A stretch of 64,000 bases of DNA from IMGVR_UViG_3300027668_000008:186001-250000, one strand, 5' to 3'; shown: positions 2,633 through 52,839, counted from the first letter of the stretch. Notes: generated from the letters alone by a model not told the origin. Numbers and translations: made by a program.

Positions 2633-3373
2633 TTAGTCTAGTGTCCATACTGTATCTCGTGATCCGTTTTCAATTAATTCTCGTGTTTTATCAGATTTTA
2701 ATCCTGTAATTTGAATAACTGATCTCGGATAACTGCTTGTATTAGCCGTTGCGTGTGGTACATTGGGCCAATCAAAAATATGTGCTTCGCCGGCTTTCCA
2801 ACGTTCGTATACACAATTACCATACATATAAAATTGACCAGGCTTCCAATCATCTAGGAAAAATGTAATACGACATACTTGCTCTGGGTCATCTAAACAA
2901 CGATCCCATAACTTATCAATATGCAAGTTAAACATTTGTCCAGTTCGTTGAACGTGTGAACGTGCTTTAAATTCGTCTACTCCACCAATAATGCCAAAGT
3001 GTTCTTTCATTTTGATAAGGGTTGGGTAGTCGTCTAACTCGTCGGTCATGTCAGTTAACATTAAGTTTTTAGGATCACCGCCGCCTTTTGCAATATCATG
3101 TTCTTCTTGTTTTAACATTGGAGATTCTACTTCACTCTCTCCATAAAATTTTCGTGTTTGCCAGTTAATAGACTTATTAGAATTTTCAATTAATCTGTTT
3201 TTATCGTCTGACCAATCACCTTCAAAACGACCTAGAACTTTGAACCATTCGCCTTCCTTATCAATAATATTATCATCAAAGTGATACTCGCTGTGTGCTA
3301 CTGTCCAATCCCAACTACTTTCGTATTTGTCTGCAGGTTGTAAAGTTTTATTCCATTTTGTTTTATTATACAT
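2633..3373 (-). CDS. 2OG-Fe(II) dioxygenase / AspH-like cupin hydroxylase
   Basis: HID...PHATAN...R facial triad and WKAGEAHIFD strand. Confidence 0.7.
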   Translation of the reverse strand: MYNKTKWNKTLQPADKYESSWDWTVAHSEYHFDDNIIDKEGEWFKVLGRFEGDWSDDKNRLIENSNKSINWQTRKFYGESEVESPMLKQEEHDIAKGGGDPKNLMLTDMTDELDDYPTLIKMKEHFGIIGGVDEFKARSHVQRTGQMFNLHIDKLWDRCLDDPEQVCRITFFLDDWKPGQFYMYGNCVYERWKAGEAHIFDWPNVPHATANTSSYPRSVIQITGLKSDKTRELIENGSRDTVWTLD

Positions 3374-4874
3374 AATCTATTCCTTTATCTTTTCTTAATA
3401 CGCTGTTTAAAAATATGCCAACAGCGATTATAATACAAACTAAAAATATAGGGTGATTGTAAATATTAAACAATTCTCCCCATCTAAATCCTTCCATAGA
3501 AGTTAGTCCTGGTTTCCACTGTTTGTATCCGTATAACTGTAGTGTTCCCCAAAAGTATTCATCAATCTTAAATGCTACAACATATGCAACAAGGATTGCT
3601 GGTCTACTAATGTTAAATTTCTTACATACTACACCAATTGCACTTAAAATAGTTAACAAGGCTAAATCTTCCCAACCACCTGTATACTGCATATTTGCGT
3701 AAACAATTACTGCTAAAATAAATGTTGCATAAATCCAAAAAGGAACTTCTAATATTTTAAGAATATACTTGTACAGAAAAATACTTAATAGTGCTACACC
3801 AATTGTTCCAAAGATATAACCAAATGCTAAACTGTTTGTAAATTGTAAATCATCTAGTAAACTTGGTGTACCAATTTCCATACCAAAGTACATACAAATT
3901 GCCATAACCATAGCCGCAAATGGTGCCGCTGGAATTCCAAATAACACTGCTGGTATCATACTAGATACTTTTTGTGCATTGTTGGCTCCTTCACAACCTA
4001 GTAGTCCTACAGGGTTACCTTCTCCAAATGGAACTTCTTGATCTTTACCTTTGTGTGCGGCTTTAGTGGCACCGTATGCTAAAAAGTCTCCTACTGCTCC
4101 GCCTACACCTGGTAATAGTCCAGTAACGAACCCAATTAGTCCTCCACGAACCATGTCTTTCCAATGTCGTCTACAATCGCCGAAGCCTTGCTTTAAACCT
4201 TCAAAATAGTTTCCTTCTATTGGTGGTGCCGCTGATTTTAATCCTCGTCTAAATCCATCTAATAACTCCGGAACTCCGAATAGTCCTGATAATAAAACTA
4301 CCATGCCAATTCCGTTTTGTAGATATTCCCAACCAAATGTTAGTCTAGGATTACTTACAACATCTTCGCCTACCATACCTACTGCTAATCCAAATATGAT
4401 TGCACAGATACTTAAAAATATATTTTTACTTGCCACAAAGCCTACACAGGCTAGGGCCATTGTCATGAATCCCAGAAACTCTGGACGTCCAAATAATACG
4501 ATAATCTTCCCATAATAAGGAAGTAAAAAGAAAGTTAATGCCGCGAATATAACTCCATTAAATGTAGAGTCAGTAATAGCAATTCCCATTGCTCTTGCCG
4601 CCTGGCCTTTCTTTGCCATTGGATAACCATCGATAACACAAGCCGCTGTTGTACTAGCGCCTGGTATACCTGTTAGAATACTTGTATAACTATCTGCACT
4701 GGCACAACTTGCCACGATTGCAGTCAGAAAGACCAACCCCAAATAGGGGTCAGCCATAAAGTACGCTCCCATGCTAAAGACAGTTATCAGGGCGGTAGTT
4801 ACACCTGCAATAGGTATAATACCAACTAGCATTCCATACATGGTGCCAATTAATGCCCAGATAACATAATCCAT
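3366..4874 (-). CDS. tctA: Tripartite tricarboxylate transporter, large membrane subunit
   Basis: 502-aa polytopic protein with GIIPIAG, ILTGIPG...DGYPMAKKG, GLLPGVGG and EGANNA...GIP motifs. Confidence 0.92.
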   Translation of the reverse strand: MDYVIWALIGTMYGMLVGIIPIAGVTTALITVFSMGAYFMADPYLGLVFLTAIVASCASADSYTSILTGIPGASTTAACVIDGYPMAKKGQAARAMGIAITDSTFNGVIFAALTFFLLPYYGKIIVLFGRPEFLGFMTMALACVGFVASKNIFLSICAIIFGLAVGMVGEDVVSNPRLTFGWEYLQNGIGMVVLLSGLFGVPELLDGFRRGLKSAAPPIEGNYFEGLKQGFGDCRRHWKDMVRGGLIGFVTGLLPGVGGAVGDFLAYGATKAAHKGKDQEVPFGEGNPVGLLGCEGANNAQKVSSMIPAVLFGIPAAPFAAMVMAICMYFGMEIGTPSLLDDLQFTNSLAFGYIFGTIGVALLSIFLYKYILKILEVPFWIYATFILAVIVYANMQYTGGWEDLALLTILSAIGVVCKKFNISRPAILVAYVVAFKIDEYFWGTLQLYGYKQWKPGLTSMEGFRWGELFNIYNHPIFLVCIIIAVGIFLNSVLRKDKGIDYV

Positions 4875-4884
4875 ACTATATTCC

Positions 4885-5940
4885 TTACTTTAAAAGTTCT
4901 GGTTTATAGATTGATGGAAAGCCGTATGCTTCTTGATTCCACTTAACCGCATCTTTAAGAGCTTTTTCTGTAATCAAAGATTTCAGTGCCGCTAGTAATG
5001 ATGGACCGTCTTGGATCCAAGGATAAACACCAGTCTTAGCATAAATTTCTGCACTTGCAACTGGATCATTAATCATCTCAGTTACAGCCGCTTTAACTTT
5101 TGCCGCATTAGGGTTACCTTTGTTCATCCAAAGTGATTTTTGAATTGCATCACGCCAATTACGAGTAAGTTTATATGCTTGATATAATTCACCTGCTGGA
5201 CGTTCGCCCCATAAGTTCTCATACACATCTTCGAATTGTGTGTTTGGAAAGTTTGGATCTGCAATTTGTACATTGTTTTCTAAGTCTAGAATACCGTGTG
5301 TGAACCAAAGTTCGTTACCTTCGATACCTGTGTAAAAACGTTTCCATGCCGCCGGACTTTCACGTGCAATATCAAATTCGCCGTTTTTAAATCCAAGACG
5401 CTTTTCTCCGCCTGATACACCGTTAACCCAGATAACACGTTCTCTCCAACAAGCCAAGTATGCTTCGATTGAACCTTCTGGTTGTGGACCACATAGCAAC
5501 ATTGCCGCCGCCGCCGCATCTGGTTCAAAACCTGATCCGCCTGCGATTGTCCAAGTGCCGGATTTTTCATCCTTGCCTGCTTGTTTACCTAAAACGATAT
5601 CATTGTTCATTGAACCAATTAGTTCATAATCAAAGTAATCGTAATCTACTTTATCTAGTAGATATGATACACCGTTACCACCATGTGCTACCATAATCGT
5701 TTTGTCATCAAAACGTAGGTCATTGTGGAATTTGTTAAAGCCAGGAATATCACGTGCCCCTGGAATATGGCGTACCACTACTGGTTCACCGATAAACTTT
5801 TCCAAGTTTTTCGCAATAATCTCGCCCCATACAGAAGTACCTTTACCAGGTGCTTGTGGAACAATTAGTGTATAATCAGCGAATGCTGATGTGGCAATAC
5901 TCATCGAAAGTACTGCTGATATTAGTAGTTTTTTAAACAT
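4885..5940 (-). CDS. tctC: Tripartite tricarboxylate transporter substrate-binding protein (TctC/Bug-like)
   Basis: Signal peptide ending AFA, IVPQAPGKGT and VVVRHIPGA motifs; adjacent to tctA. Confidence 0.8.
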   Translation of the reverse strand: MFKKLLISAVLSMSIATSAFADYTLIVPQAPGKGTSVWGEIIAKNLEKFIGEPVVVRHIPGARDIPGFNKFHNDLRFDDKTIMVAHGGNGVSYLLDKVDYDYFDYELIGSMNNDIVLGKQAGKDEKSGTWTIAGGSGFEPDAAAAAMLLCGPQPEGSIEAYLACWRERVIWVNGVSGGEKRLGFKNGEFDIARESPAAWKRFYTGIEGNELWFTHGILDLENNVQIADPNFPNTQFEDVYENLWGERPAGELYQAYKLTRNWRDAIQKSLWMNKGNPNAAKVKAAVTEMINDPVASAEIYAKTGVYPWIQDGPSLLAALKSLITEKALKDAVKWNQEAYGFPSIYKPELLK

Positions 5941-6244: not shown

Positions 6245-8686
6245 TTATTTTAAGCCTGCTAGGAATAGTATTTCATCACGTAAGTGTTGATCTTCAGGTG
6301 TTTCGGCAACTACTTCTACTGCTTCTTCAACTTTTTCTTCTTCTACTTCTTCCTTGTCATCTTTTTTGTTGCCTTTTTTAGCGGCTAACATTTTTTCAAA
6401 AGCGGCTTTTTGTGCTGGGCTTTGTGCTTCTTCTAATTCTTTTTCTTCTGCAACTGCATCATAATCAATTACTGCTGTAATGTTGTTGCCACAGCATTCA
6501 CATTCTTCTCCGATTTGTGCCTTAGTATGTTTACCTTCACAATGAGGACATCCTGATTTACATCCACAAGTTGCTTCTGTAATTCCTGAGTTTTTAATAT
6601 GGTCATGCGGTTGCATAGTACCGTCTTCGTTAATGCCTAAATCTTTCATTACTTCTTTAACCATTATACTAATATCACTTGAACCTAGTTCGTCCATTGG
6701 TGCATGGCTTTGAGCAACTTCTTCAATTGCTGATAATAATGTTTGCATATCTACATTTTTAAGAATTTTATCAAACGTTTCTGGGTTTGCAGTAATACGC
6801 CATTGAATAGCATCTGCTATTTCTTCATAACCTTCAGTATCTGCACCGTTTACTGCAACGTTTTCTACTTGTGCAGTTTCGTCTACACCGTTAATAGTGT
6901 CGTAAAATTCTTCGTTATCTGGATGCTTTGCTAAAAATTCTTCTCTAGTCATTTCTTCTGCGTCATCATGCAATGCGTTCTTAACTGCGCCTTCTGTTGT
7001 TTCTTCTTCATTGGTACTAGAGTGTGTCAAATGAGGTTTAACTATTTTTTGGATTCTGTCTTGCATTTCTTGTGGAATATCATATTGGTCTAATGAGTCA
7101 TCTACCCAAGATGCAATAATTGGTCGAGCATCACCTTGTGGGTCTTCATCAGCCGCTTCGCCTAAACTATCAAATAAACTGTCATCACCAATAATATTAT
7201 ACATAACGTTAGTAGCATTTTCGCCTTCTGCACCAAGGGGGAGTACATCAGCCATTGCTGTTTCTAAAGAATCAATTGCTTCAGCAGTATCTGGAATTGC
7301 CCAAGTACCTTCTGATAAATTATTCATTATACTTTCGTATTGATCTTCTTCTGTTTTTGCTTTTAAATCTCTTTTTCCAGGAATGATATTAACATTACCT
7401 TTCATGTATTTAGATGCTAACTGGTAAGCCGCTTGTCTATCTGGTGGAGTATCCATAGATGCTAAATCACTAATCTGTAAAGAAAGTGCATCATCGATGG
7501 TACGTTTAGCCAATGTCATAATAATTTTTCTAACTAAACCGTCTTCTGGATTTTCAGAAGTGTTTTTGTTAATAACATTTTTTTTCAAATGTTGAATATA
7601 ATTTTTAATATCCTCATCTTCTTCTGGATTCATGCGTATGTCTAATTTAGCACTTGGATCTTTTGCTAGATCATGTGCCATTGCGTTTCCACCTTCTTGT
7701 TCTTGTACTTTCATTTTATTAATCCCTCTAGCCAAATTTGGCAGTATTGTATCCACTATGTTATCTTTTTGAATACGAACTAACTTACTTCTGATATCAT
7801 CTAAGTCTGCTTGTTCGATATTATTTTCTGTTGGTCTATATTGTTCTACATATTTCGCATAACCTTTAGCACCACATAAAGTTTTTAAAGTTTCTCTAAT
7901 ACCTTGATATCTTTGACGTGCTTGTTCGATAATATGTTGTGCTTCATCTTGTTCAGCAAAATTATCTGCACGTTTAAAAACTTTAACAAATTTTGCTAAG
8001 TCGAGTGCTTCCTGTGTTATTTCGTGTATATGTTGACCAATTTCGTCTTGGTATGAACCGTTGTGATTCATATGTTGGGCTAATGCTCTGCCAGATAATA
8101 AATTTTTGAAAGGAAGTTTAACTCTTCCTTGTTCTACATTCTCTACATACAAACTATGAATGTTTCTACTACGAGAACCACGAACATCTTCATCAACAGG
8201 AGCACTATGTTTAATTATTAAACGAACATTCTCACCAAAACGTTGGTAAGATGTTTTTAACGTACCTGCTAACTTACTTTCAAATGTTACTTCTGTACTA
8301 TCATAAGCATTATCGTTATTTTTAATATAAGCATAATCAGTTTTATCTAATTGTTGCTTACCGATGTTACGAACATCAAAACTCATTAAATTTCTTTTTG
8401 CAAAAAATCTTAATTCCTTTAAAAAACTGTACCAGTCTTTCTTATCACCATGTCGCATTTCTTCTGTAATATTATTGTTATAATATATTACTAATGCATT
8501 AGGATCTACTACATTTACAGTAACACTACCATGACTTTTGCCACTTGCTCCGTACTCTAGGGTAAAAATTCTACCTTCGTTTGGTTCAACCGTAGTCACT
8601 GCTTGACTATCTGCGATGGTCAATTGAGTGAATTTTTTGGCTAGTACGCCATATAAGTCTTTTGCTACTTTATCATGTATTTGCAT
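6245..8686 (-). CDS. Large hypothetical protein, probably head-associated
   Basis: 813 aa with an acidic C-terminal half and repeated hydrophobic-X-E sites; ends EILFLAGLK like the scaffold; follows the terminase gene. Confidence 0.55.
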   Translation of the reverse strand: MQIHDKVAKDLYGVLAKKFTQLTIADSQAVTTVEPNEGRIFTLEYGASGKSHGSVTVNVVDPNALVIYYNNNITEEMRHGDKKDWYSFLKELRFFAKRNLMSFDVRNIGKQQLDKTDYAYIKNNDNAYDSTEVTFESKLAGTLKTSYQRFGENVRLIIKHSAPVDEDVRGSRSRNIHSLYVENVEQGRVKLPFKNLLSGRALAQHMNHNGSYQDEIGQHIHEITQEALDLAKFVKVFKRADNFAEQDEAQHIIEQARQRYQGIRETLKTLCGAKGYAKYVEQYRPTENNIEQADLDDIRSKLVRIQKDNIVDTILPNLARGINKMKVQEQEGGNAMAHDLAKDPSAKLDIRMNPEEDEDIKNYIQHLKKNVINKNTSENPEDGLVRKIIMTLAKRTIDDALSLQISDLASMDTPPDRQAAYQLASKYMKGNVNIIPGKRDLKAKTEEDQYESIMNNLSEGTWAIPDTAEAIDSLETAMADVLPLGAEGENATNVMYNIIGDDSLFDSLGEAADEDPQGDARPIIASWVDDSLDQYDIPQEMQDRIQKIVKPHLTHSSTNEEETTEGAVKNALHDDAEEMTREEFLAKHPDNEEFYDTINGVDETAQVENVAVNGADTEGYEEIADAIQWRITANPETFDKILKNVDMQTLLSAIEEVAQSHAPMDELGSSDISIMVKEVMKDLGINEDGTMQPHDHIKNSGITEATCGCKSGCPHCEGKHTKAQIGEECECCGNNITAVIDYDAVAEEKELEEAQSPAQKAAFEKMLAAKKGNKKDDKEEVEEEKVEEAVEVVAETPEDQHLRDEILFLAGLK

Positions 8687-8691
8687 ATTAC

Positions 8692-8699
8692 TATTTACC
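8692..8699 (-). promoter_or_regulatory. Late promoter (GGTAAATA), 5 nt before the ATG
   Basis: Motif match and position. Confidence 0.65.
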
Positions 8700-8703
8700 T
8701 TTT

Positions 8704-10275
8704 CTATAACATTAATGTAGGCATAGGTTCTACTACATCGTCAAAATTATCGCTTAAAAGCTCGTCTATTCCAGCATCATACTTCTTTAACACCATACTC
8801 ATACGCACTGCTAACACTAAAGACATGACTAAATCATCTGTTTCGCCAGGTCTTGCTTGGTAACTACTACCAACTGCAACAAACGACTTTAATTCTGATA
8901 TTAAATTTCTACTGTTAATTACTAATCTCTTTGTTTCGATTAAACTTTTTAACTTGGCACAAGCAGATAGTTTAGATTTATGTGTTGTATTAAACCCTCT
9001 ACGAAACTTTTTACTATTACCATGTCCTTTGGGTTCACTAATAAAGAAGCCTGGAATATTCTCTTCACCTATTTCTGCTATTGTAACTAGTGCCGCTTCT
9101 CCTAATGTGTTATTCTCTACACTGTAGTAAACATCATTAGGTTCATCAATACATTGTACCAAATACTCGCCAATAGATTTCATTATTTTAATTTGCTGTG
9201 CTATTGGAGTTTTATTGTGCATAAACTCAGCAACTTGTTCTAACGATGGCATCTCTATAACTTGTATGGCGGCATTATCGCCTCCAGTACCTAAACTAGG
9301 ATCTAAACTTATTAAGTATATACTTCCTTTTTTAGGTTTTTTGAACCATCTAACTTGACCTTGTCTATCAATAGGGTCTTTGCCTTCTAACTCTGCTAAT
9401 CTAATTGGATTAATTAATGTTTCATCAAAGATAATTGGTTCACAATCCATCTCACGTTTAAAACGTTCTTCTCCAATACGCCCTAATTCTTCGTTGGCCC
9501 ACTTCTCATCTCTGTCTGGGTGTTCTCTCCAAAGTGCTTTAAAGCCGTAGAAGCCGTTTATCCCTATACCGCCTTTTAATGGGTGACCGTAATCGTCGAT
9601 AGTTCTGTTTGCTTCTGTCCATAACAACCAAAACTGATCTTCGTCACTGTTAGGTGTACTTGTAATAATTGCTTTACCACCAGTTGCCAACGTTGGAGAT
9701 ATCGAAGTCCAAAACTCTTTAGCAATAGTTGGTCTCACAAACGCAAACTCGTCACAGTATAGTAACGTAATGGACATACCACGTCCTGTGTTTTCTGTTG
9801 TTGCTTGTGCTACAATTCTACTTCCGTTTTCAAATTCAATTGAGCCTTTGTTGTAACTAGTTACACCGGCTCTAATATGATTGGGCATGAGTTCATATGC
9901 ATATCGTATACGTTGCATAATTTCTTGTGCACCTGCATATTTGTGAGCCGCAATTAAGATAGTGCTATCCGGTACAAACATACCGTACCACAACAGGTAA
10001 CCTGCCGCTGTAGTAGTTTTTCCCATTTGTCTACTTAATAAATTAATACTAAATCGATTAGTGTGATAACTGTTAACTAACGTTTCTTGAAACTTATAAG
10101 CGTTGTATAAAATTTTACCAAGAACCGGGTGCTGAATATGAAAATATTTTGATAAGAAATATTCAGGCCCTGTATCAGGATTTGCACATTCCATGAATTC
10201 TTTTAATTCATCTTCTGTCCAACGTTCTGCCTGGTGTGGCTTTTTAATTAAAACACCGTCTAAACTTCTGCTCAT
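8704..10275 (-). CDS. gp17: Terminase large subunit
   Basis: SRQMGKTT Walker A, LYCDEFAF Walker B, ITSTPN, nuclease SLDPSLG and DDLVMS motifs. Confidence 0.97.
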   Translation of the reverse strand: MSRSLDGVLIKKPHQAERWTEDELKEFMECANPDTGPEYFLSKYFHIQHPVLGKILYNAYKFQETLVNSYHTNRFSINLLSRQMGKTTTAAGYLLWYGMFVPDSTILIAAHKYAGAQEIMQRIRYAYELMPNHIRAGVTSYNKGSIEFENGSRIVAQATTENTGRGMSITLLYCDEFAFVRPTIAKEFWTSISPTLATGGKAIITSTPNSDEDQFWLLWTEANRTIDDYGHPLKGGIGINGFYGFKALWREHPDRDEKWANEELGRIGEERFKREMDCEPIIFDETLINPIRLAELEGKDPIDRQGQVRWFKKPKKGSIYLISLDPSLGTGGDNAAIQVIEMPSLEQVAEFMHNKTPIAQQIKIMKSIGEYLVQCIDEPNDVYYSVENNTLGEAALVTIAEIGEENIPGFFISEPKGHGNSKKFRRGFNTTHKSKLSACAKLKSLIETKRLVINSRNLISELKSFVAVGSSYQARPGETDDLVMSLVLAVRMSMVLKKYDAGIDELLSDNFDDVVEPMPTLML

Positions 10276-10284
10276 TTATATGCC

Positions 10285-10521
10285 TTACTTGTTTAAACTT
10301 TTGATATGCTTGTGTAGTTGTGCTACAAGTTTATCTTTTGTTTCTCTTCTATCTAACTCAATTTTATGAGTTCTGCCTAAGTTTTCTAATGCTTTCTTAG
10401 TTAACTTGGCAAGTTCTTTTTTGCTAGGTACTATTGCTGGTTTTTGCTTAACAACCTTTACGGGTTTTAAAGTTTCGACAAGCGGTTTTACTGCAAAGAT
10501 TTTTTCAAACCATTTGAACAT
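10285..10521 (-). CDS. Small basic protein with HeH / Rho-N-like domain
   Basis: LTKKALENLGRTHKIELDRRETKDKLV pattern; good RBS; late promoter at 10564-10571. Confidence 0.55.
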   Translation of the reverse strand: MFKWFEKIFAVKPLVETLKPVKVVKQKPAIVPSKKELAKLTKKALENLGRTHKIELDRRETKDKLVAQLHKHIKSLNK

Positions 10522-10679
10522 ATTAATTCTCCTTTTAATTATAATATATACATATTACTATTATATTTATCGGTAAAATAAACCTGTTGTAAGAAAGTGT
10601 TATAGAATGGGGCAATATACAAGCATACGACCCTCAAATTCGTCGTATAAGCAAGTCTTTGTGTGTTAACTACAACTTA

Positions 10680-10916
10680 TTAGTCGTCGTAGGGTTTTTC
10701 ACCAGTTAACCACGGTTTACTGAACCAAAGTCTAAACCATGCTTGTGTTCCGGGTTGGATTTTCTTTTTCTTTGCTACTTTAGAAAGATCATTAGCAAGA
10801 CTGCCAATGTTTTCACCTACTATAGATGAGTAAGGGGTCAATCCAGAATATGAACCAACCCCTGCTAATTTTTTTAATTCGTCTAACTCTTTATCAAATG
10901 CTTTTTTATCAGCCAT
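10680..10916 (-). CDS. Hypothetical protein
   Basis: ELKKLAGV motif and C-terminal IQPGTQAWFRLWF; co-oriented with neighbours. Confidence 0.6.
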   Translation of the reverse strand: MADKKAFDKELDELKKLAGVGSYSGLTPYSSIVGENIGSLANDLSKVAKKKKIQPGTQAWFRLWFSKPWLTGEKPYDD

Positions 10917-10924
10917 GATTGAAA

Positions 10925-11848
10925 TTACATATCGCTTAACATTTTAGACAGTCTATCTTGTAACTCTACTGCTAAAGGATTGTCGCCTGGATATTCTTTC
11001 TTAGTTTGTTTCTTGGGACCGTTAAGTCCACCTGACATTTTGTTTAGTTGTGTGTCTGCATCGAAGTATTCTTCGTCTGGAGAGTTACTATACTCGTCAA
11101 GTTCAACTTCGCTAGTTGCCTGAGTTGGTGCCTGTTCAGCCTGTTCAGCCTTATGATCATGTCCATCACACTCACATTTATCAATTTCCTTGTCACAAGT
11201 ATCACATAACTCTAAATTATCTTTAGAAAAGTCAAAGTCTTTTTCTTCTGCTTCTGCTTTAACTTCTTGCTTTGCCATACCAGCGAGATCTAAAATTCTT
11301 GCTAAATCCTCTACTGCTACTTCAACTACATCTTTTTTAGCAATTGATGTTCCTTCAATTAAACCTTCATCGGATAATGCATCCTGGATCCATTGATAAG
11401 GATCGCCGTCTCTTGCTTTTTGTGTACCATACGGCATATCGCCAGTTTCACTATAGTACGAAAACAATTCCATGTATAATTCGTCGTCGTCTCCGATATC
11501 AGTCTTGCCGGATTTTAAATCAGCGTATGCTTTAGGATGTTTATTAAGAATACTTTCAGCATCTCTATCATATGCATCTTCTTCAGATACTTCTAAAGGT
11601 GCTTCTTGAATAGTATCTTCATCACTATCAATTGCTTCGACTTTGTACTTCTTTCCGCCAACTGTAAATTCTGCTTTGCCATCTTTTCTGGCTTTTTCAA
11701 GTGCTCCTGAGAATTCGTTGCCTTCGTTAGTATCGTCTGACTCAACTCTTAGTGCATTTTGCACTGCTGGTTTTTTATTTAATTCTTTTGCTATGTCAGT
11801 TGGCTTGTTAGTTTGTACACTTTCTAATGCGTCTAATATATCTCTCAT
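10925..11848 (-). CDS. Acidic hypothetical protein, putative internal head / prohead core protein
   Basis: Acidic, repeated hydrophobic-X-E sites, ILDLAGM motif. Confidence 0.5.
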   Translation of the reverse strand: MRDILDALESVQTNKPTDIAKELNKKPAVQNALRVESDDTNEGNEFSGALEKARKDGKAEFTVGGKKYKVEAIDSDEDTIQEAPLEVSEEDAYDRDAESILNKHPKAYADLKSGKTDIGDDDELYMELFSYYSETGDMPYGTQKARDGDPYQWIQDALSDEGLIEGTSIAKKDVVEVAVEDLARILDLAGMAKQEVKAEAEEKDFDFSKDNLELCDTCDKEIDKCECDGHDHKAEQAEQAPTQATSEVELDEYSNSPDEEYFDADTQLNKMSGGLNGPKKQTKKEYPGDNPLAVELQDRLSKMLSDM

Positions 11849-11860
11849 AATAATGTTATC

Positions 11861-12406
11861 CTATTCCTTATTTTCTTTTGCAATTTCGTCTGCATATGCT
11901 GTTGCCAAAGAAACTGTAGGAGTTTCTTTATTATTTGCTAAATCTTTTAAAAAGTTTGCGTTATATTCGTCACCGAAATGTTCGCTTGCCTTAATCTCTA
12001 CTGCATCTTTTAACTCTGGAGTTCCAAGTGCAGGTACATAATCTTTTCCCATGTCTTCAACGTATTCTTCCCTAGCAACTTCATTAGGATCGTTTGGATT
12101 AGATACCATAACGTGTGATCCAGGAAGTCCTGCATAGTCTACTAATTCCTGTCTTAACATATCAACTGTTGAGGGATATGTTATGGAAATATCCATTATA
12201 GTAACTTCTGAATTTTTCATAGTTTGAAAATCCATAGGGTGTTCTTGTATAGGTGTAACTTTAGGCTTGGTCATATCTTTTAAATTATATTTTCCAAGTG
12301 CTATTTCAATTCTATCCAATTGAGCATCAGTTAAAGTACCTGCGTACTTCACACGAAATTTGTATTCTTTAATGTTTTCCATTAAATATTGCTTAAATGT
12401 TTTCAT
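11861..12406 (-). CDS. Putative internal head protein
   Basis: N-terminus MKTFKQYLME resembles the T4 internal-protein capsid-targeting sequence. Confidence 0.55.
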   Translation of the reverse strand: MKTFKQYLMENIKEYKFRVKYAGTLTDAQLDRIEIALGKYNLKDMTKPKVTPIQEHPMDFQTMKNSEVTIMDISITYPSTVDMLRQELVDYAGLPGSHVMVSNPNDPNEVAREEYVEDMGKDYVPALGTPELKDAVEIKASEHFGDEYNANFLKDLANNKETPTVSLATAYADEIAKENKE

Positions 12407-46431: not shown

Positions 46432-47679
46432 TTAACTAAATGTTGGGTTAGCAATAGTTACTCTACCAACGTAATCCGCCGCGTTTCCAAGTGAACTTGC
46501 AGTTTGTGAAAGTTCGCTGTAACCGTAACGTGTCATAAAGCCAACTAATGGCTCTAATGTTGCTGGATCAAGTACTACACCTGAACTCATTAGTGGAACG
46601 TAAGGACAATAAAATGCCGCCGCGTCCGCTTCTGATGAACCTTTGTAACCAACTAATACCGCTTCTGAATCAGCCGCATAACTGTCAACATAGATTCTCA
46701 TTGCTGAGTTCAATGTACCAACGAATTTAGTATTTGTTGGTGCTTCAAAAGTACCTTCAGTTGTTCTTGCGAACGCTGAAGTAGATGCACTTTGTAGCAT
46801 AGTTAATGCAGTTGGAGAAACAACAGCCCAGTTACCTGCGCCACGTCTTGTTCTCTGTGCGATTTTGTTAGATACTCTGTTGATCGCCACAGCCAAAGCC
46901 GCGTGTTCGTCACCAACGTAAGTTGCTGTACCACTAACTGCCGCTTGGTCATATGCTTCAGTGTTTGCACCGAAAGCCGTTGAACCAGCCGCCGCTAAAG
47001 TTCTTAAAGAACTTAGAACTTCTTGGTCGATCTCTGCAGTAATCTCTTGGGCTAATGCCGCCATGATTTCTGCTTCTACATCAATACCTTGTTGTGATTG
47101 AGCGTCTTGAGCCGCTTCAAAAGTCCAACGAGCTGATAGTCTTCTAGTACGAGCTTCTACAGTTTGACGTAGAATTTCGATTGAAAGAGTATTACCTGGA
47201 ACACCTTCTAAGTATCCAGCCGCTGTTGTACCAGCCGCTTTTGCACCTGCCGCCGATTCAGTACCTGAATAACCAGCCGCGATGTCTTTTGGCCCTAGAG
47301 CCTCATCGTTAGCGGCTAGGTTAGTACCGTCATTAGTAGTTGCTTGAATTGCCGCACCGTTGGCACTATTAATAGTGTTTGCAGAGTTATATTTAACTCT
47401 TAAAGTGTGGATTTGTGCAATTGGACCAGTCATAGGTTGTACACCAACGATTTCATTTGCAATCACTGTTGGCATTACACGTCTAATTACGGGTAAAATT
47501 ACTTTGTTTAATTGTGCTACACCACCTGCCGCTGTCGCGCCACTAGTTGCCGCCTCTGAAAGGTGGCGTTTAGTATTTTCAAGTATTGTAGACATTGTCT
47601 TGCGACGAGTACCTTGTAAACCATCTAAAAGGGCTTCTTTAGTATTGTCCCAACGACCTTCTGCTAAAATATCAGACAT
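46432..47679 (-). CDS. gp23: Major capsid protein
   Basis: IVGVQPMTGP, RRLSARWTFEAAQD, EIDQE, FYCPYVPL and TRYG motifs. Confidence 0.98.
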   Translation of the reverse strand: MSDILAEGRWDNTKEALLDGLQGTRRKTMSTILENTKRHLSEAATSGATAAGGVAQLNKVILPVIRRVMPTVIANEIVGVQPMTGPIAQIHTLRVKYNSANTINSANGAAIQATTNDGTNLAANDEALGPKDIAAGYSGTESAAGAKAAGTTAAGYLEGVPGNTLSIEILRQTVEARTRRLSARWTFEAAQDAQSQQGIDVEAEIMAALAQEITAEIDQEVLSSLRTLAAAGSTAFGANTEAYDQAAVSGTATYVGDEHAALAVAINRVSNKIAQRTRRGAGNWAVVSPTALTMLQSASTSAFARTTEGTFEAPTNTKFVGTLNSAMRIYVDSYAADSEAVLVGYKGSSEADAAAFYCPYVPLMSSGVVLDPATLEPLVGFMTRYGYSELSQTASSLGNAADYVGRVTIANPTFS

Positions 47680-47701: not shown

Positions 47702-48793
47702 TTAGTTTAGTCCCGCCAGACGCTTAATTTCAATGATATTGCCCTCATCTTCTGCGTTCACGGATTCTTTTTTATTACCAGTTACTTCTTTCGACTCCAT
47801 TATAGCATGAGATTTTGTCTCTGCTTTAACTTCGTTTTTAAGAACTGCTGGCAAGTACTTATTAAATGTACCTGTAAGTTTATCAGTTACGACATTTTCA
47901 AGTAAGTCTTGCATTACCGTTTTCTGATTTTTGCTTAAAGGTGCCATCATTTCGTTTAACTGTTGATCACGGACAATGCGATCATTGATTCTACGAATTT
48001 CTGCTTCTTTGCTTTCAACTAAAGTAGATTTCTCAACTGCAACTTTTTTCGATTCATCAAGTTGTTTAGTTACGTTTGCTACTGCTGTTTGCAAATCTTT
48101 AATCTCTGAATTTTCATTCAAATGTGATGTTGCAAACTCACTAGCAAATGTTTCAAACAATTTGCGTCCGAAGTTATTTTGACGTGCAGTGTCAATATCT
48201 TCTTTTAATTGAGTTAACTCGGTGTTAAGATTCTTAACGACTGAATCCTTCACTAATTTACTTGAACGTTCAATGAAAGTCTCTTTAAGTTTTGAAAGTT
48301 GTTTCTTGCCTTCTGCAACAAGTTTAACTCTAGTTTCTACAACTGCTTCTTTATCCTTATGGAATTCAGCAATCTCTTCTGCTAGTGCTTTTACAACAAA
48401 CTTTTGTAACTTATCAAGAGTTTCTGCTTGAACTTTACGATCGTCGTTTAGTTCGCTTAATTCAGCACCTAGTTTACCAATCATGAATGATTTAACTTTA
48501 TCAGTCTGTTCAGACATTCTAACGTTATATCTTACACGATCTTCTTCTAGTGCTTTGCGTTCTGAAACGATATTCTCAAGTTCCTTAGTTAAGTTTTCAT
48601 TTACCATCTTGTCAAGACTCTCAACCATAGTAGTTTTGTCATGCTCATAACGACGAGAAAATTCTTCTCGTAACTCACCGCGGATCTCTTCCCTAGTTTC
48701 AGTTAACTTGGTTTCCCATGCTTCCTGAATTTCAGTCTTAGTTTCCTCGTTGACTATACCGCTATCAAGCAATGGTTTGAGTGCGTCAAACAT
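47702..48793 (-). CDS. gp22: Prohead core scaffold protein
   Basis: Coiled-coil, GRKLFETF motif; between the protease and capsid genes. Confidence 0.88.
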   Translation of the reverse strand: MFDALKPLLDSGIVNEETKTEIQEAWETKLTETREEIRGELREEFSRRYEHDKTTMVESLDKMVNENLTKELENIVSERKALEEDRVRYNVRMSEQTDKVKSFMIGKLGAELSELNDDRKVQAETLDKLQKFVVKALAEEIAEFHKDKEAVVETRVKLVAEGKKQLSKLKETFIERSSKLVKDSVVKNLNTELTQLKEDIDTARQNNFGRKLFETFASEFATSHLNENSEIKDLQTAVANVTKQLDESKKVAVEKSTLVESKEAEIRRINDRIVRDQQLNEMMAPLSKNQKTVMQDLLENVVTDKLTGTFNKYLPAVLKNEVKAETKSHAIMESKEVTGNKKESVNAEDEGNIIEIKRLAGLN

Positions 48794-48797
48794 TTGG

Positions 48798-49433
48798 TCA
48801 ACTCCTTAATTTAAGTTCATTGATAAGGTTTATAACCTCATCTTTTAAAAATTTTTGCACACGAGTATCTTCTTTAGCCTCTGCCGCTAATCCTAAAATT
48901 TTATGTCCATGTTTCATGTTCATTAAACCTTCGTAAATTGCAGTTGGGTAGGCATTTGGTGCACTCGGTTGTGCAACTACGTCTACTGTGACGATTTCGA
49001 AACCACTAACTTCACCGTTAGCATCATTGACTTCGCCGCTTCCGCGACTTGAAACTCCCAATTTGACACCGCTTTCTAGCATTGTTCGTACTAGTTGACC
49101 CATCGGTGTTGGGAGAATTTTTAGTTTACCATAACCATTTGGACCATCCATCCACATTTCTGTAATCATGTGGCATACTCGATCTAGGTTAATTTTTAAA
49201 TCGTCTGGATGATCTACTTCTCCTAATACAGAGTCGCCTTTTGTAATTTGATCATTTAACGTAGTAACCGCCGAAGTAATTTGGTCCACAGGGTAAAGTC
49301 TTTGGTTGTGATTTTTCACACCACCTTGAATACAAATTCCTTTAAGGTATAAATCCTTGCCGTCATTCGCACTTTCTGTGACCATCTTTGCTTGGTCATA
49401 TGTTAAGTTCTCTTTTAAATACATTGAGCTCAT
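48798..49433 (-). CDS. gp21: Prohead core protease
   Basis: LGEVDHP, LGVSSRGSG and DVVAQPSAPNA motifs. Confidence 0.96.
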   Translation of the reverse strand: MSSMYLKENLTYDQAKMVTESANDGKDLYLKGICIQGGVKNHNQRLYPVDQITSAVTTLNDQITKGDSVLGEVDHPDDLKINLDRVCHMITEMWMDGPNGYGKLKILPTPMGQLVRTMLESGVKLGVSSRGSGEVNDANGEVSGFEIVTVDVVAQPSAPNAYPTAIYEGLMNMKHGHKILGLAAEAKEDTRVQKFLKDEVINLINELKLRS

Positions 49434-50560: not shown

Positions 50561-51124
50561 TTATTTATTAAAAAATATATTAAATGATAAACTAACCCTT
50601 GTATCATGAGATTCGTTCCGCATTATACCATGTTTTAAGTATCCGGGGAATAAAAGCAGTTTACCTACAACAGGTTTATGTTGCCAAGAACCCGTTGTTA
50701 CACAAGTAGACATAGCCACTTGTACTGTAGGATTCTCGAAAACTATGTTCCCGTCTTTTTGATTTGTTTGAAAATAATATACGCCTGATATGTCTGCGTT
50801 ACCGTGGTCATGAACATGACCATAATCGTTATGTTCAAATAACGATATCCATGATTCCATTCGATAGTCATTGCTATGTGTATAGCCTAACTGCTCTGAA
50901 AACTCATTTAAATTCTCATTTAAAAATAAGTTAAAGTTAGTTAAGTTATAGTTCTTTATTATATCGTCTGAGAGTTTAGATATTTTATGGGTCTTACCCC
51001 AATCTAGATTGTATTCTGTACCAGTGTCTTGTACAACAATACCAATTTCGTGTTGTATGTTTTTTAAATTTTCGTCTTTAGCAAAACTGCACCATAAAGG
51101 TGTAGGGAAGATATTTTCTATCAT
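50561..51124 (-). CDS. 2OG-Fe(II) oxygenase (phage type)
   Basis: IFPTP, HDH, ISGVYY, LFPGYLKH and RVSLSFN motifs. Confidence 0.88.
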   Translation of the reverse strand: MIENIFPTPLWCSFAKDENLKNIQHEIGIVVQDTGTEYNLDWGKTHKISKLSDDIIKNYNLTNFNLFLNENLNEFSEQLGYTHSNDYRMESWISLFEHNDYGHVHDHGNADISGVYYFQTNQKDGNIVFENPTVQVAMSTCVTTGSWQHKPVVGKLLLFPGYLKHGIMRNESHDTRVSLSFNIFFNK

Positions 51125-51135
51125 TCCTGTTCTCC

Positions 51136-52839
51136 TTATAAGTCGATATCTGCGTTAGGGTCTCCGCCTAAGTCATCTGCTACATCAACTTCGTCACCAC
51201 CTACTCCTGCTTCTGCTTCTGCATCAGCGTCTAAGTCTGTGTTTAATCCACCTGGTGTAACTCCGACACTTCGTAAATCTTGTCCAACTGTTTGTTGTGC
51301 TTGTGTTTTTCCGTTTTCCTCTGCCCAAAGTTTATCATTCTCTGCAAGTTCTTCTTCGCTAATACCTAAGAAACGTTTAAGCATGAATCGTTTGCTCAAA
51401 TAAGGTGTTTGTGATAAACTTGTAAACAATGAAGCACGTTGGTTGTCTAATTCTGCTTGTCTGTAAGCCGCAAAGTTTTGAGGTTCATTCAAACGCAAAT
51501 CAAACATACTACTATCAATATTAAAACCTTTCCAGTTTAAAAACATTTTGAACTCATGGTCAAATGATGTTGCCACTGTGTTTTGTAAACGTTTACAATA
51601 TTGATTGAATCTGTATTCTTGGATTAATGCAGTTCCTACTCTACCATCACTTGCAACCGAACTTCCGTCCTCTGCACCTGTTGGCAAATAACTACTTGGA
51701 ATTCTTAATCCTCTAAACAACTTGTTAGTAAAGTATTTCAAGTCATCAATTTCACCTAAGTTTGTACCACCCGGTAATGTTTCAACTTTAGATCCTCTAC
51801 CTTCAGCAGTTTGTGGAAAGAAATAATCTTCGTTAATACTCAATGGATTATATGTTGCATCCATCATACTTCCGCCGCCACCACTTTGTGTTGGAATACG
51901 TCTTTGGTGTATTTCGTTTTTAACTCTGTTAACGTAACCCATTGCCATGTGTGCTGGCATATTACCTACGTCAATATAGAACACACGTCTTTCAGGAGCA
52001 CGTTGCACCCTGTAAATAATAATAGCGTCTTCTAATAATTCTTTTTGTTTGTATACTTTAAATACACTTTCTAAAACACTGAGACCAAAGGGCCAATTAG
52101 GATCTAATCCTTCAGTTAAACTAATATGCACAACATGACTGGCATCAATTGCCATTTCGTTTGTTGAGTTACTAAATCTAGAATTGTTTGTAGCAGAATT
52201 TAAATTATAAATGTTACCCTGGCCTTGATTGGCGGCAACGCCTCCTTGACTTCCCATAGTTCCACCCGACTTCATGTCACCATGTTGAGGTTGTGTTACT
52301 GTTAGGTTTTCAAAATTAGGATTAATATTTTTTAAAACGTACTGCTCAGGTTCTTTACCTTTGCTTTCGTTTACAATAACTTTAACAATGTCTGCATTGT
52401 CTACCCAATGCCATTGAAATGTTTCTGGATCTCTAACAAATATTTGATCACCATACTTTAATGTATTACGAAACATTTTAAATATTCGTTTATCAAAATC
52501 GTTTAAACTTACCCAACTATGTAGTGCTTCTTTAAGTACTTTTACTTCAGAGTCACTTGGTTGTTCTTTAAAGAATATATCGAACGGTGTTTTATTTTCA
52601 ATATTTGTTTGTGTACTGAATTCTGCTAGGATATCTAGTGCCGCATTAATCTCACTGTCGCTATCCATAGTTTCATATTGAGTATATCGTTCAACACGGT
52701 TTGGATGTCCTGTATAAACTTCTGGTAGATGACTTTGATAGTTCTTGAAGCCCACGTCAGCCTGAGAATCTCTTGGCATAGTCGTAGAGCCTGTCATGCT
52801 ATTAGTGTCTACTACTTTAAAATACTTTTTCCAACTCAT
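51136..52839 (-). CDS. gp20: Portal vertex protein
   Basis: EDAIIIYRVQRAPERRVFYIDVG, EDYFFP and VETLPGG motifs. Confidence 0.97.
   Translation of the reverse strand: MSWKKYFKVVDTNSMTGSTTMPRDSQADVGFKNYQSHLPEVYTGHPNRVERYTQYETMDSDSEINAALDILAEFSTQTNIENKTPFDIFFKEQPSDSEVKVLKEALHSWVSLNDFDKRIFKMFRNTLKYGDQIFVRDPETFQWHWVDNADIVKVIVNESKGKEPEQYVLKNINPNFENLTVTQPQHGDMKSGGTMGSQGGVAANQGQGNIYNLNSATNNSRFSNSTNEMAIDASHVVHISLTEGLDPNWPFGLSVLESVFKVYKQKELLEDAIIIYRVQRAPERRVFYIDVGNMPAHMAMGYVNRVKNEIHQRRIPTQSGGGGSMMDATYNPLSINEDYFFPQTAEGRGSKVETLPGGTNLGEIDDLKYFTNKLFRGLRIPSSYLPTGAEDGSSVASDGRVGTALIQEYRFNQYCKRLQNTVATSFDHEFKMFLNWKGFNIDSSMFDLRLNEPQNFAAYRQAELDNQRASLFTSLSQTPYLSKRFMLKRFLGISEEELAENDKLWAEENGKTQAQQTVGQDLRSVGVTPGGLNTDLDADAEAEAGVGGDEVDVADDLGGDPNADIDL

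What the first reader, a model, noticed from the sequence alone, without database searches (positions are those of the whole stretch)
6245..11848. Shared [ER]-[IL]-x-x-LAG-[LVM] motif links the scaffold to three unknown proteins
Seen: the scaffold ends EIKRLAGLN, the 813-aa protein ends EILFLAGLK, the 78-aa ORF (10680-10916) has ELKKLAGVG, and the 307-aa ORF has RILDLAGMA. The two large acidic ORFs also carry hydrophobic-X-E sites like the capsid LSE-A site. Known: scaffold C-termini often bind coat protein, and T4 gp21 cleaves after Glu. Inference: a portable prohead-targeting tag that loads cargo proteins into the head, much as encapsulin targeting peptides do.
Basis: partly seen in the sequence, partly recalled or inferred. 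Interest (0 to 1): 0.62.

Follow-up and report, generated by a model that had tools for sequence, protein, structure and literature searches.

The report
Shared head-targeting tag, jumbo phage
A ten-residue peptide that ends the head-scaffold protein of this marine jumbo phage also sits on several fast-evolving virion proteins, most likely as a portable address label that gets them built into the phage head, although the partner it binds has not been shown.

Summary
The window lies in a 306.7-kb jumbo myophage of the PA5oct/RaK2/Atu_ph07 clade. The strict motif occurs 4 times in the whole proteome (0.07 expected).

The motif is an amphipathic helix, Phi-x-x-Phi-[KRL]-[RK]-L-[A/S]-G-Phi.
- It ends 109 of 111 scaffold homologues and 76 of 102 homologues of the 813-aa protein. 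The sequence just upstream of the tag in that family is barely conserved.
- It occurs in 89 of 120 relatives of the 307-aa protein, at N-terminal, internal or C-terminal positions.
- Synonymous codons vary freely, so selection acts on the peptide.
- In the scaffold model it is a short helix on a roughly 35-residue low-confidence tether.
- Tag-bearing counterparts were found by mass spectrometry in PA5oct and RaK2 virions.
- Elsewhere the tag is fused to a NUDIX enzyme (Atu_ph07) and to an amidoligase-domain protein.

My best reading (about 0.55) is a portable signal that uses the scaffold tail's receptor to load proteins into the prohead. The receptor is unknown.

The cleavage-site part of the finding is not supported. 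Hydrophobic-x-Glu sites are enriched only in the scaffold.

This is a new variant of a known kind.

The parts
47702..48793 (-). Head scaffold protein, 363 aa. It is one very long helix plus a low-confidence C-terminal tether that ends in the tag.
   Evidence: The gene lies between the S77 prohead protease and the gp23-type capsid gene. It matches phrog_10922 and proteins annotated as scaffolding protein in related jumbo phages. The AlphaFold2 model has helices at 16-205 and 223-283, and residues 323-363 have pLDDT below 50. Hydrophobic-x-Glu sites are enriched, 24 observed against 12.8 expected.
47708..47737 (-). Scaffold tag IIEIKRLAGL (residues 353-362), one residue before the stop codon.
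   Evidence: The tag is present in 109 of 111 homologues. The model has a short helix at 355-359. All synonymous Leu, Ala and Gly codons are used across 70 distinct coding sequences.
6245..8686 (-). 813-aa acidic protein (pI 4.75). It has a conserved N-terminal domain, a hypervariable Cys-containing middle and a C-terminal tag.
7697..8686 (-). Conserved N-terminal domain (residues 1-330) of the 813-aa protein, in a virion-structural-protein family.
   Evidence: phrog_13484, E 1.4e-17. tblastn matches PA5oct gp278, which carries a mass-spectrometry note, and RaK2 ORF112. The AlphaFold2 model has pLDDT 81.5 and no convincing fold match in the PDB.
6251..6280 (-). Tag RDEILFLAGL (residues 803-812), one residue before the stop codon.
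   Evidence: In this family 76 of 102 homologues have the tag in the last 9 residues. Information content is about 0.8 bit per position upstream and 2-3 bits at positions -3 and -2.
10680..10916 (-). 78-aa protein with the tag LDELKKLAGV near its N-terminus (residues 11-20, coded at 10857-10886) and a conserved W/F-rich C-terminus.
   Evidence: The ORF is 78% identical in a relative whose 813-aa homologue is only 63% identical. A 39%-identical homologue in a more distant relative keeps the tag and sits next to the terminase gene.
10925..11848 (-). 307-aa very acidic protein (pI 4.28) with the internal tag LARILDLAGM (residues 182-191, coded at 11276-11305), a Cys cluster and a conserved C-terminal GDNP-plus-helix element.
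   Evidence: It holds the same position as PA5oct gp281, RaK2 gp050 and Serratia BF gp209, all tag-bearing virion proteins. Sequence homology to RaK2 gp050 is only suggestive: hhalign E 0.0024, probability 12%.
8704..10275 (-). Large terminase subunit. It serves as the synteny anchor between the tag-bearing genes.
   Evidence: Pfam Terminase_6N and Terminase_6C. The order tagged gene, TerL, 813-family gene recurs in G001, G002, G004, G005, PA5oct and Atu_ph07.
46432..47679 (-). Major capsid protein (gp23 type), a candidate receptor. It has a likely maturation site after HLSE at residue 42.
   Evidence: Pfam Gp23, E 4e-98. N-terminal sequence. The closest solved structures are T4-type gp23.
48798..49433 (-). 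Prohead protease (S77, T4 gp21 type).
   Evidence: Pfam Peptidase_S77, E 2.9e-28, and phrog_207.
51136..52839 (-). Portal protein (T4 gp20 type), an alternative candidate receptor.
   Evidence: Pfam Portal_T4, E 2.9e-109.

Best explanation
The motif is a short linear interaction motif. It is an amphipathic helix of about ten residues with hydrophobic positions at -6, -3, 0 and +3, and it ends in L-[A/S]-G-hydrophobic. Its primary home is the extreme C-terminus of the head scaffold protein, where it hangs on a disordered tether. Several other protein families of the same phage clade carry a copy at either end or inside a disordered stretch.

The likely mechanism is as follows. The scaffold tail docks on a receptor inside the assembling prohead. 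By analogy that receptor is most probably the inner face of the gp23-type capsid protein, and otherwise the scaffold core or the portal. Any protein carrying the same peptide is co-assembled into the prohead through that receptor. The protease then digests the scaffold, and the tagged proteins stay in the virion.

Shown: the motif, its conservation, its portability, selection at the protein level, and virion presence of tag-bearing relatives.
Inferred: binding, the receptor, and the requirement of the tag for incorporation.
For: - Enrichment: 4 observed against 0.07 expected in the genome.
- The scaffold tag is kept from the marine clade to PA5oct, Atu_ph07, Vibrio 2.275.O and Serratia BF, whose scaffolds are 33-39% identical to this one.
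- The tag is the only strongly conserved element in the C-terminal stretch compared (last 45 residues) of the 813-aa family, whose members range from 448 to 1047 aa.
- It is position-independent in the 307-aa family: 10 copies are N-terminal, 4 are C-terminal, the rest are internal, and 22 proteins carry two copies.
- Third codon positions vary freely while L-A-G is invariant.
- In the scaffold model the tag is a short helix after a low-confidence linker.
- Virion evidence in cultured relatives: PA5oct gp281 (two tags) and gp249 (one tag) both carry ESI-MS/MS notes, and RaK2 gp050 is in the virion mass-spectrometry table.
- The Atu_ph07 NUDIX protein gp257 begins with a near copy of that phage's own scaffold tail, including the trailing Lys-Lys.
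- A relative's 1182-aa amidoligase-domain protein ends in the tag.
- Precedents: the 80alpha scaffold and SaPI1 CpmB share a C-terminal RIIK motif that binds the same capsid-protein site (PMC6893505). T4 internal proteins share a capsid targeting sequence (PMC3012670).
Against: - There is no direct evidence of binding to any partner, and no solved structure from this clade exists.
- The PA5oct homologue of the 813-aa protein (gp278) is a virion protein without a terminal tag, so the tag is not required for that family to be incorporated.
- The RaK2 gp050 detection rests on one peptide.
- The mass-spectrometry lists of PA5oct also contain many non-structural enzymes, so a virion note is weak proof.
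- The 899-aa tagged ORF lies far from the structural genes and has no known role.
- This phage clade also encodes a ClpA/B-like AAA+ protein that could be an alternative reader of the tag.
Confidence: 0.55

Rival explanations
1. The tag is read not by the capsid but by an assembly or processing enzyme. One candidate is the phage's own ClpA/B-like (or BCS1-like) AAA+ unfoldase or translocase. The other is the S77 prohead protease, which could use the tag as a docking site. Under this reading the tag marks proteins for unfolding, translocation or cleavage rather than for capsid binding.
For: - The genome encodes a 797-aa ClpA/B-like ORF, and PA5oct encodes ClpA, ClpX and ClpS homologues.
- A comparative paper proposes that such AAA+ proteins in this jumbo-phage subgroup may translocate proteins packaged into the head (PMC7824862).
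- An AAA+ ATPase gene sits just downstream of the tagged gene block in RaK2, Serratia BF and the Vibrio phage.
- In the scaffold the residues just before the tag often form hydrophobic-x-Glu (I-I-E), and the scaffold is enriched for such sites.
Against: - Internal and N-terminal copies are common, which is unusual for terminal degrons.
- Asp is as frequent as Glu at position -4 in scaffolds, whereas proteases of this type are known to cut after Glu.
- The invariant part is L-A-G-hydrophobic, not the acidic residue.
- Tagged proteins persist in virions rather than being degraded.
Confidence: 0.15
2. The tag docks on the portal vertex rather than on the capsid shell. The tagged proteins would then be low-copy portal-proximal or DNA-end-associated head proteins, which would fit their genes flanking the terminase gene.
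For: - The tagged genes flank the large terminase gene in G000, G001, G002, G004, G005, PA5oct and Atu_ph07.
- From my own knowledge, scaffolds of other phages recruit the portal during assembly.
- Detection of RaK2 gp050 from a single peptide suggests low abundance.
Against: - In RaK2 and Serratia BF the tagged gene is not next to the terminase gene.
- In the well-studied cases the scaffold's C-terminal tail binds the capsid protein (PMC6893505).
Confidence: 0.12
3. The motif is a self-association or helix-capping element that spreads by module shuffling among related disordered proteins. It has no shared receptor and no targeting role.
For: - The tagged proteins are mosaics that share other small modules: the GDNP element, Cys clusters and N-terminal helices.
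- Common descent of a module could explain part of the sharing.
Against: - The tag is kept while everything around it turns over.
- It is found on unrelated folds, including a NUDIX domain, an amidoligase domain and a coiled-coil scaffold.
- It sits exactly at the C-terminus in two unrelated families.
- The Atu_ph07 NUDIX tag copies that phage's own scaffold tail.
Confidence: 0.1
4. The motif is a chance resemblance, or a signal at the DNA or RNA level (for example a promoter or RNA structure overlapping the gene ends).
For: The motif is short and was defined after the fact. Two of the four copies abut stop codons next to downstream genes.
Against: - 4 observed against 0.07 expected, and no shuffle of 200 reached 4.
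- The motif is conserved in hundreds of homologues.
- All six Leu codons and all four Ala and Gly codons are used, with third-position entropy of 1.4-1.9 bits.
Confidence: 0.02

Closest known systems
C-terminal RIIK motif shared by the phage 80alpha scaffold protein and the SaPI1 protein CpmB
   Same: A very short motif at the extreme C-terminus of a helical scaffold protein is also carried by a second, otherwise different protein. That protein thereby uses the scaffold's binding site on the capsid protein (PMC6893505).
   Different: - The sequence differs (R-I-I-K against L-A/S-G-hydrophobic).
- The capsid lineage differs (small HK97-type siphophage against gp23-type jumbo myophage).
- There the second protein belongs to a parasite and changes capsid size. 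Here the carriers are the phage's own virion proteins and enzymes, and copies also occur internally and at N-termini.
- Binding is not shown here.
T4 capsid targeting sequence (CTS) of internal proteins IPI-III and Alt
   Same: A conserved peptide of about 10 residues on otherwise diverse proteins directs them into the scaffolding core of a gp23/gp21-type prohead. It can carry foreign proteins (PMC3012670).
   Different: - From my own knowledge, the T4 CTS is N-terminal, is removed by gp21 and is not part of the scaffold gp22.
- T4 gp22 lacks the present motif.
- Here the tag is the scaffold's own tail and is mostly C-terminal or internal.
Herpesvirus scaffold and protease sharing one C-terminal capsid-binding tail (from my own knowledge, not tested here)
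   Same: The same C-terminal tail on the scaffold and on a cargo (the protease) takes both into the procapsid by binding the major capsid protein.
   Different: There the sharing comes from nested in-frame genes, and the only cargo is the protease. Here independent genes carry independent copies, and the protease has a different C-terminal helix.
Encapsulin cargo targeting peptides (from my own knowledge, not tested here)
   Same: Short, mostly C-terminal peptides with small residues flanked by hydrophobic ones, on a flexible linker, load enzymes into an HK97-fold shell.
   Different: - Encapsulins have no scaffold, portal or DNA.
- The consensus differs.
- No homology is implied.

Membership tests
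Scaffold-tail motif shared with other proteins (80alpha SP / SaPI1 CpmB type) | The motif lies at the extreme C-terminus of the scaffold protein. | tested here: met
   109 of 111 homologues carry it within the last 9 residues. The same holds in PA5oct, Atu_ph07, Vibrio 2.275.O and Serratia BF.
Scaffold-tail motif shared with other proteins (80alpha SP / SaPI1 CpmB type) | The same motif is carried by at least one non-scaffold protein of the same system. | tested here: met
   Four further proteins in this genome carry it. Two to six do so in each relative examined.
Scaffold-tail motif shared with other proteins (80alpha SP / SaPI1 CpmB type) | The motif binds a defined site on the major capsid protein. 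| not testable with these tools
   This needs cryo-EM of proheads or peptide-binding assays. No solved structure from this clade exists.
T4-type capsid targeting sequence | An N-terminal leader of about 10 residues. | tested here: not met
   The copies here are C-terminal (scaffold, 813-aa, 899-aa) or internal (307-aa). Only the 78-aa ORF and a minority of relatives have it near the N-terminus.
T4-type capsid targeting sequence | The leader ends in hydrophobic-x-Glu and is removed by the gp21-type protease. | tested here: inconclusive
   Glu or Asp at -4 with a hydrophobic residue at -6 is common in scaffold tags. Such sites are not enriched in the cargo ORFs. Cleavage itself cannot be tested here.
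T4-type capsid targeting sequence | The tagged proteins are found inside the head. | tested here: inconclusive
   Tag-bearing PA5oct gp281 and gp249 and RaK2 gp050 are in virion mass-spectrometry lists. Their location within the virion is unknown, and no data exist for this uncultured phage.
gp22-like prohead scaffold (role, not sequence family) | The gene lies between the prohead protease and the major capsid protein, the product is long and helical, and it is rich in protease sites. | tested here: met
   Gene order. Helices at 16-205 and 223-283. Hydrophobic-x-Glu sites 24 observed against 12.8 expected, z 3.7.
gp22-like prohead scaffold (role, not sequence family) | Detectable sequence similarity to T4 gp22. 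| tested here: not met
   There is no Pfam scaffold family hit and no PDB hit. The T4 gp22 C-terminus is unrelated.
Encapsulin targeting peptide | The cargo enzyme carries a terminal peptide on a flexible linker that binds the interior of an HK97-fold shell with no scaffold involved. | tested here: not met
   The system here has a scaffold, a protease and a portal, and the tag is the scaffold's own tail. The resemblance is functional only.

The most novel reading that the evidence does not exclude
The L-[A/S]-G-hydrophobic helix is a universal, position-independent capsid-loading signal of the whole RaK2/PA5oct/Atu_ph07 jumbo-phage clade, which has thousands of members in aquatic metagenomes. 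It would let one read the packaged, and probably injected, proteome directly from sequence, including enzymes such as a NUDIX hydrolase and an amidoligase-domain polyvalent-like protein. It could also be transplanted to load foreign proteins into very large capsids.
Probability: 0.35. Interest if true: 0.75.

Novelty: new variant of a known kind. Interest (0 to 1): 0.6.

Why it matters
How jumbo phages select the many minor proteins that end up inside their large heads is poorly understood outside T4 and the phiKZ group. The tag described here has three useful properties. It can be recognised from sequence, it is conserved from marine metagenomic phages to cultured Pseudomonas, Klebsiella, Serratia, Vibrio and Agrobacterium phages, and it is shared by the scaffold and several cargo-like families.

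That would give:
- a direct, testable handle on scaffold-capsid docking in this clade;
- a way to predict packaged or injected proteins in uncultured phages;
- a candidate peptide for loading foreign proteins into large capsids, as was done with the T4 targeting sequence.

I found no description of the motif in five full-text searches, in a term search of the PA5oct and RaK2 genome papers, or in a jumbo-phage comparative review.

Tried and rejected
- **Complex prediction.** The capsid protein (84-row alignment) was run with the last 45 residues of the scaffold (42-row alignment). The score was 0.18 against a mark of 0.32, so there was no verdict and the controls were not run. This is no evidence either way.
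- **Fold of the 813-aa N-terminal domain.** Foldseek against the PDB gave nothing at E <= 0.001. VIA-align gave only generic helical-hairpin matches with Z below 7. The ESM Atlas feature search gave one unnamed viral cluster at 0.76.
- **Similarity searches against the phage collection.** Megablast of 6245-12000 found no match. tblastn of the 307-aa ORF found no match.
- **Motif-profile search of whole phage records.** The genome search on four cultured phages returned zero candidates even where the tag is known to be present. I treated it as an invalid negative and replaced it by downloading the genomes and scanning them.
- **T4.** gp22, gp21, gp68 and the other head proteins checked have no such motif.
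- **Cleavage sites.** Enrichment of hydrophobic-x-Glu sites in the two acidic ORFs was rejected.
- **A second signal.** The conserved N-terminal M-R-D-I-L-D-A-L-E of the 307-aa family is not enriched at N-termini across this genome.
- **DNA-level explanation.** Rejected by the synonymous-codon analysis.
- **Covariation of the last tag residue.** Across 8 genomes the final residue (Leu against Ile) tends to agree between the scaffold and its cargo (my tabulation). The trend is too weak and too dependent on phylogeny to use.
- **Homology of the 307-aa family to RaK2 gp050.** hhalign gave E 0.0024 and probability 12%, which is only suggestive.
- **PA5oct supplementary peptide tables.** These are not held.
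- **Literature string search** for the peptide found nothing relevant.
- **Other points.** No genetic code other than table 11 was used.


Full report
**Context**

The window is bases 186001-250000 of a single 306.7-kb contig with 36% G+C. Its genes are those of a jumbo myophage:
- a T4-type large terminase, portal, S77 prohead protease and gp23-type capsid protein;
- ORFs placed as tail sheath and tube by their order relative to the annotated PA5oct genes.

The protein between the protease and the capsid gene matches proteins annotated as scaffolding protein in Pseudomonas phage PA5oct, Agrobacterium phage Atu_ph07, Vibrio phage 2.275.O and the RaK2-like phages, at 33-39% identity. More than 7000 homologues exist in metagenomes. 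An AlphaFold2 model shows one very long helix (16-205, then 223-283). It also shows a low-confidence C-terminal stretch (323-363) that ends in a five-residue helix. Hydrophobic-x-Glu sites are about twice as frequent as expected in this protein (z 3.7), as one would expect for a scaffold digested by a gp21-type protease. The label 'scaffold' is therefore well founded by position, shape and composition. There is no detectable sequence similarity to T4 gp22.

**The observation**

All four peptides are present as described, on the minus strand. In the whole proteome (403 ORFs, 96,747 residues) the strict pattern occurs only these four times. Composition predicts 0.07, and none of 200 shuffles reached four. 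The bare tetrapeptide L-A-G-[LVMI] is not enriched (6 observed, 7.4 expected), but four of the six copies have the full upstream context.

The pattern was chosen after the fact, so the real test is conservation:
- **Scaffold family.** 109 of 111 full-length homologues end in the tag, zero to two residues before the stop codon. All of about 76 scaffold genes next to capsid genes in IMG/VR contigs do the same.
- **813-aa family.** Lengths run from 448 to 1047 aa, with a conserved N-terminal domain of about 320 residues. 76 of 102 homologues have the tag in the last nine residues, against a chance of 0.0017 per protein. The 36 positions upstream of the tag carry about 0.8 bit each, while positions -3 and -2 carry 3.0 and 2.2 bits.
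- **307-aa family.** 89 of 120 relatives carry the tag, against a chance of 0.10. It is internal in most, within the first 16 residues in 10 and at the C-terminus in 4, and 22 proteins have two copies.

The consensus has hydrophobic residues at -6 and -3, mostly basic residues at -2 and -1, then L-[A/S]-G-[L/I/V/M]. Across 70 distinct scaffold coding sequences the residues L, A and G are invariant. All six Leu codons and all four Ala and Gly codons are nevertheless used. Selection therefore acts on the peptide and not on the DNA or RNA.

A profile scan of the genome found a fifth copy. An 899-aa ORF of unknown function, outside the window at G000:63414-66113, ends in L-D-R-I-K-Y-L-S-G-L.

I downloaded two long metagenomic relatives and the genomes of PA5oct, RaK2, Vibrio 2.275.O, Serratia BF and Atu_ph07, plus selected regions of two further relatives (G004, G005). 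Each has the scaffold tail tag plus further tagged proteins. Synteny is striking:
- A tagged, very acidic, apparently disordered protein sits just upstream of the large terminase gene. In the RaK2 group it sits in the block after the tail-tube and head-completion genes.
- The 813-family gene sits just downstream of the terminase gene.
- The small 78-aa ORF is a real gene. It is 78% identical in a relative whose 813-aa homologue is 63% identical, and a 39%-identical homologue with the tag sits next to the terminase gene in a more distant relative.

**Are the tagged proteins head or virion proteins?**

For this uncultured phage there are no data. The evidence from cultured relatives is as follows:
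- PA5oct gp281 has two tags and holds the position of the 307-aa ORF. PA5oct gp249 has one tag. Both carry ESI-MS/MS virion notes.
- RaK2 gp050 is the positional counterpart. It is listed in the virion mass-spectrometry table with one peptide and 5.3% coverage.
- Serratia BF gp209 is annotated as a virion structural protein.
- The N-terminal domain of the 813-aa protein matches phrog_13484 (virion structural protein) and PA5oct gp278, which was detected by mass spectrometry.

There are two caveats. PA5oct gp278 has no terminal tag, so the tag is not the only route into the virion for that family. The PA5oct list also contains many enzymes, so a mass-spectrometry note is weak proof of structural status.

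**Portability**

Two cases show the tag on recognisable enzymes:
- Atu_ph07 gp257 is a NUDIX-domain protein (Pfam E 6e-11). Its first 14 residues nearly repeat that phage's own scaffold tail, including the two lysines after the motif.
- A 1182-aa protein of relative G004 has an Amidoligase_2 domain (34 bits against a cut-off of 22) and ends in the tag. A neighbouring 373-aa protein does too.

The large tagged proteins are mosaics of small modules. This recalls the polyvalent proteins that some phages are thought to deliver with their DNA (PMC5512222, listed; PMC7824862). That link is a resemblance and has not been tested.

**Mechanism**

The best-supported reading is that the scaffold tail docks on a receptor in the growing prohead, and that other proteins carrying the same peptide are co-assembled through that receptor.

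I favour the inner face of the capsid protein as the receptor. In the studied cases a short C-terminal scaffold element binds the capsid protein. In the 80alpha/SaPI1 system a second protein uses the same site through the same C-terminal motif (PMC6893505). The T4 capsid targeting sequence shows that a ten-residue label is enough to load diverse proteins into a gp23/gp21-type prohead (PMC3012670).

The conservation, the disordered context, the portability and the virion presence of relatives are shown. Binding, the identity of the receptor and the requirement of the tag are inferred.

**Rivals**

1. The reader of the tag could be an enzyme rather than the shell. The genome has a ClpA/B-like ORF. 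A comparative study proposed that such AAA+ proteins help load head proteins in this phage subgroup. An AAA+ ATPase gene also follows the tagged gene block in three relatives. Against this, internal and N-terminal copies are frequent, and tagged proteins persist in virions.
2. The receptor could be the portal, which would fit the linkage to the terminase gene. That linkage is absent in the RaK2 group.
3. The motif could be a shuffled self-association module with no targeting role. This reading is hard to square with its presence on unrelated folds and its exact terminal placement.
4. Chance and DNA-level signals are excluded.

**What in the finding does not hold**

The two acidic ORFs are not enriched in hydrophobic-x-Glu sites (z 0.8 and -0.8), so these sites are not evidence that they are protease substrates. 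The capsid site H-L-S-E followed by A is present.

**Comparison and novelty**

The tag works like the T4 targeting sequence, the 80alpha/CpmB RIIK motif and the shared herpesvirus scaffold/protease tail. It differs from them in sequence and in position: it is the scaffold's own tail, and it also occurs internally and at N-termini. It also differs in the range of carriers.

I found no description of it in five full-text searches, in a term search of the PA5oct and RaK2 papers, or in a jumbo-phage review. These searches cover open-access papers only. I rate it a new variant of a known kind. It is of real interest to phage-assembly specialists and is directly testable in PA5oct or RaK2.

Noticed in passing
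G000:C1:63414-66113 (minus strand; outside the window; L004:7415-10114): A fifth tag-bearing ORF of 899 aa, with no family assignment, ends LDRIKYLSGL-stop. Its last residues resemble the C-termini of two tagged proteins (1182 aa with an amidoligase domain, and 373 aa) in relative G004.
   Followed up: partly
window 3366-4874 and 4885-5940 (minus strand): A TctA-family tripartite tricarboxylate transporter membrane subunit (Pfam E 1e-86) and an adjacent 351-aa ORF (no Pfam family) lie directly downstream of the 813-aa gene inside the phage genome. The pair is conserved in a 63%-identity relative (L168/L169). This is a likely auxiliary metabolic gene pair.
   Followed up: partly
window 10925-11848 (C-terminal about 60 residues) and counterparts in RaK2 gp050, Serratia BF gp209, Vibrio NVP2275O_389 and PA5oct gp281: A second conserved short element, G-D-N-P-[L/M] followed by a terminal helix, marks the C-terminus of the 307-aa family across the whole clade. 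The family also keeps an N-terminal M-R-D-I-L-D-A-L-E-like helix (59 of 120 relatives) that is not a genome-wide feature.
   Followed up: partly
window 6245-8686 and 10925-11848, with tagged counterparts in relatives: The tag-bearing acidic proteins carry small Cys clusters. The 813-aa ORF has 8 Cys and the 307-aa ORF has 4. Relatives carry CxxC-containing clusters that recall DnaJ-type zinc fingers. These are possible metal-binding knuckles and were not analysed further.
   Followed up: no
Atu_ph07 NC_042013.1 199073-199519 (L214:2574-3020, minus strand): A NUDIX hydrolase begins with a near copy of the phage's own scaffold C-terminal tag. It is a candidate packaged enzyme.
   Followed up: partly
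G000:C1 about 74000-76500 (minus strand; outside the window): A 797-aa ClpA/B-like AAA+ ORF (AAA_2, 170 bits) is encoded by the phage. No FtsH-type peptidase was found.
   Followed up: partly
window 47702-48793, scaffold residues about 330-342: A second conserved element, L-x-E-S-[K/R]-x-E-V-T-G-[D/N]-K, lies about 25 residues upstream of the tag. It contains a hydrophobic-x-Glu site, so the last 30 or so residues might be released as a peptide on maturation.
   Followed up: no
window 50561-51124 (minus strand): A 2OG-Fe(II) oxygenase-family ORF (Pfam E 2e-18) sits between the portal and prohead protease genes, which is an unusual place for an enzyme gene.
   Followed up: no
window 48798-49433 (C-terminus): The prohead protease ends in its own conserved amphipathic helix (V-I-N-L-I-N-E-L-K here, I-I-K-L-I-S-E-L-K in PA5oct). 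It is different from the L-A-G tag and may be a separate incorporation signal.
   Followed up: no
window 10285-10521 (minus strand): The second 78-aa ORF, next to the terminase gene, is basic (pI 10.3) and conserved in relatives. It gives weak PHROG hits to an Arc-like repressor and to a prohead protease inhibitor (E about 0.002).
   Followed up: no
relative G001:C1 142222-145477: The large terminase gene of relative G001 is split into 214-aa and 460-aa parts by a 421-aa ORF, probably an inserted mobile element. PA5oct likewise has many Hef-like homing endonuclease genes in its structural region.
   Followed up: no
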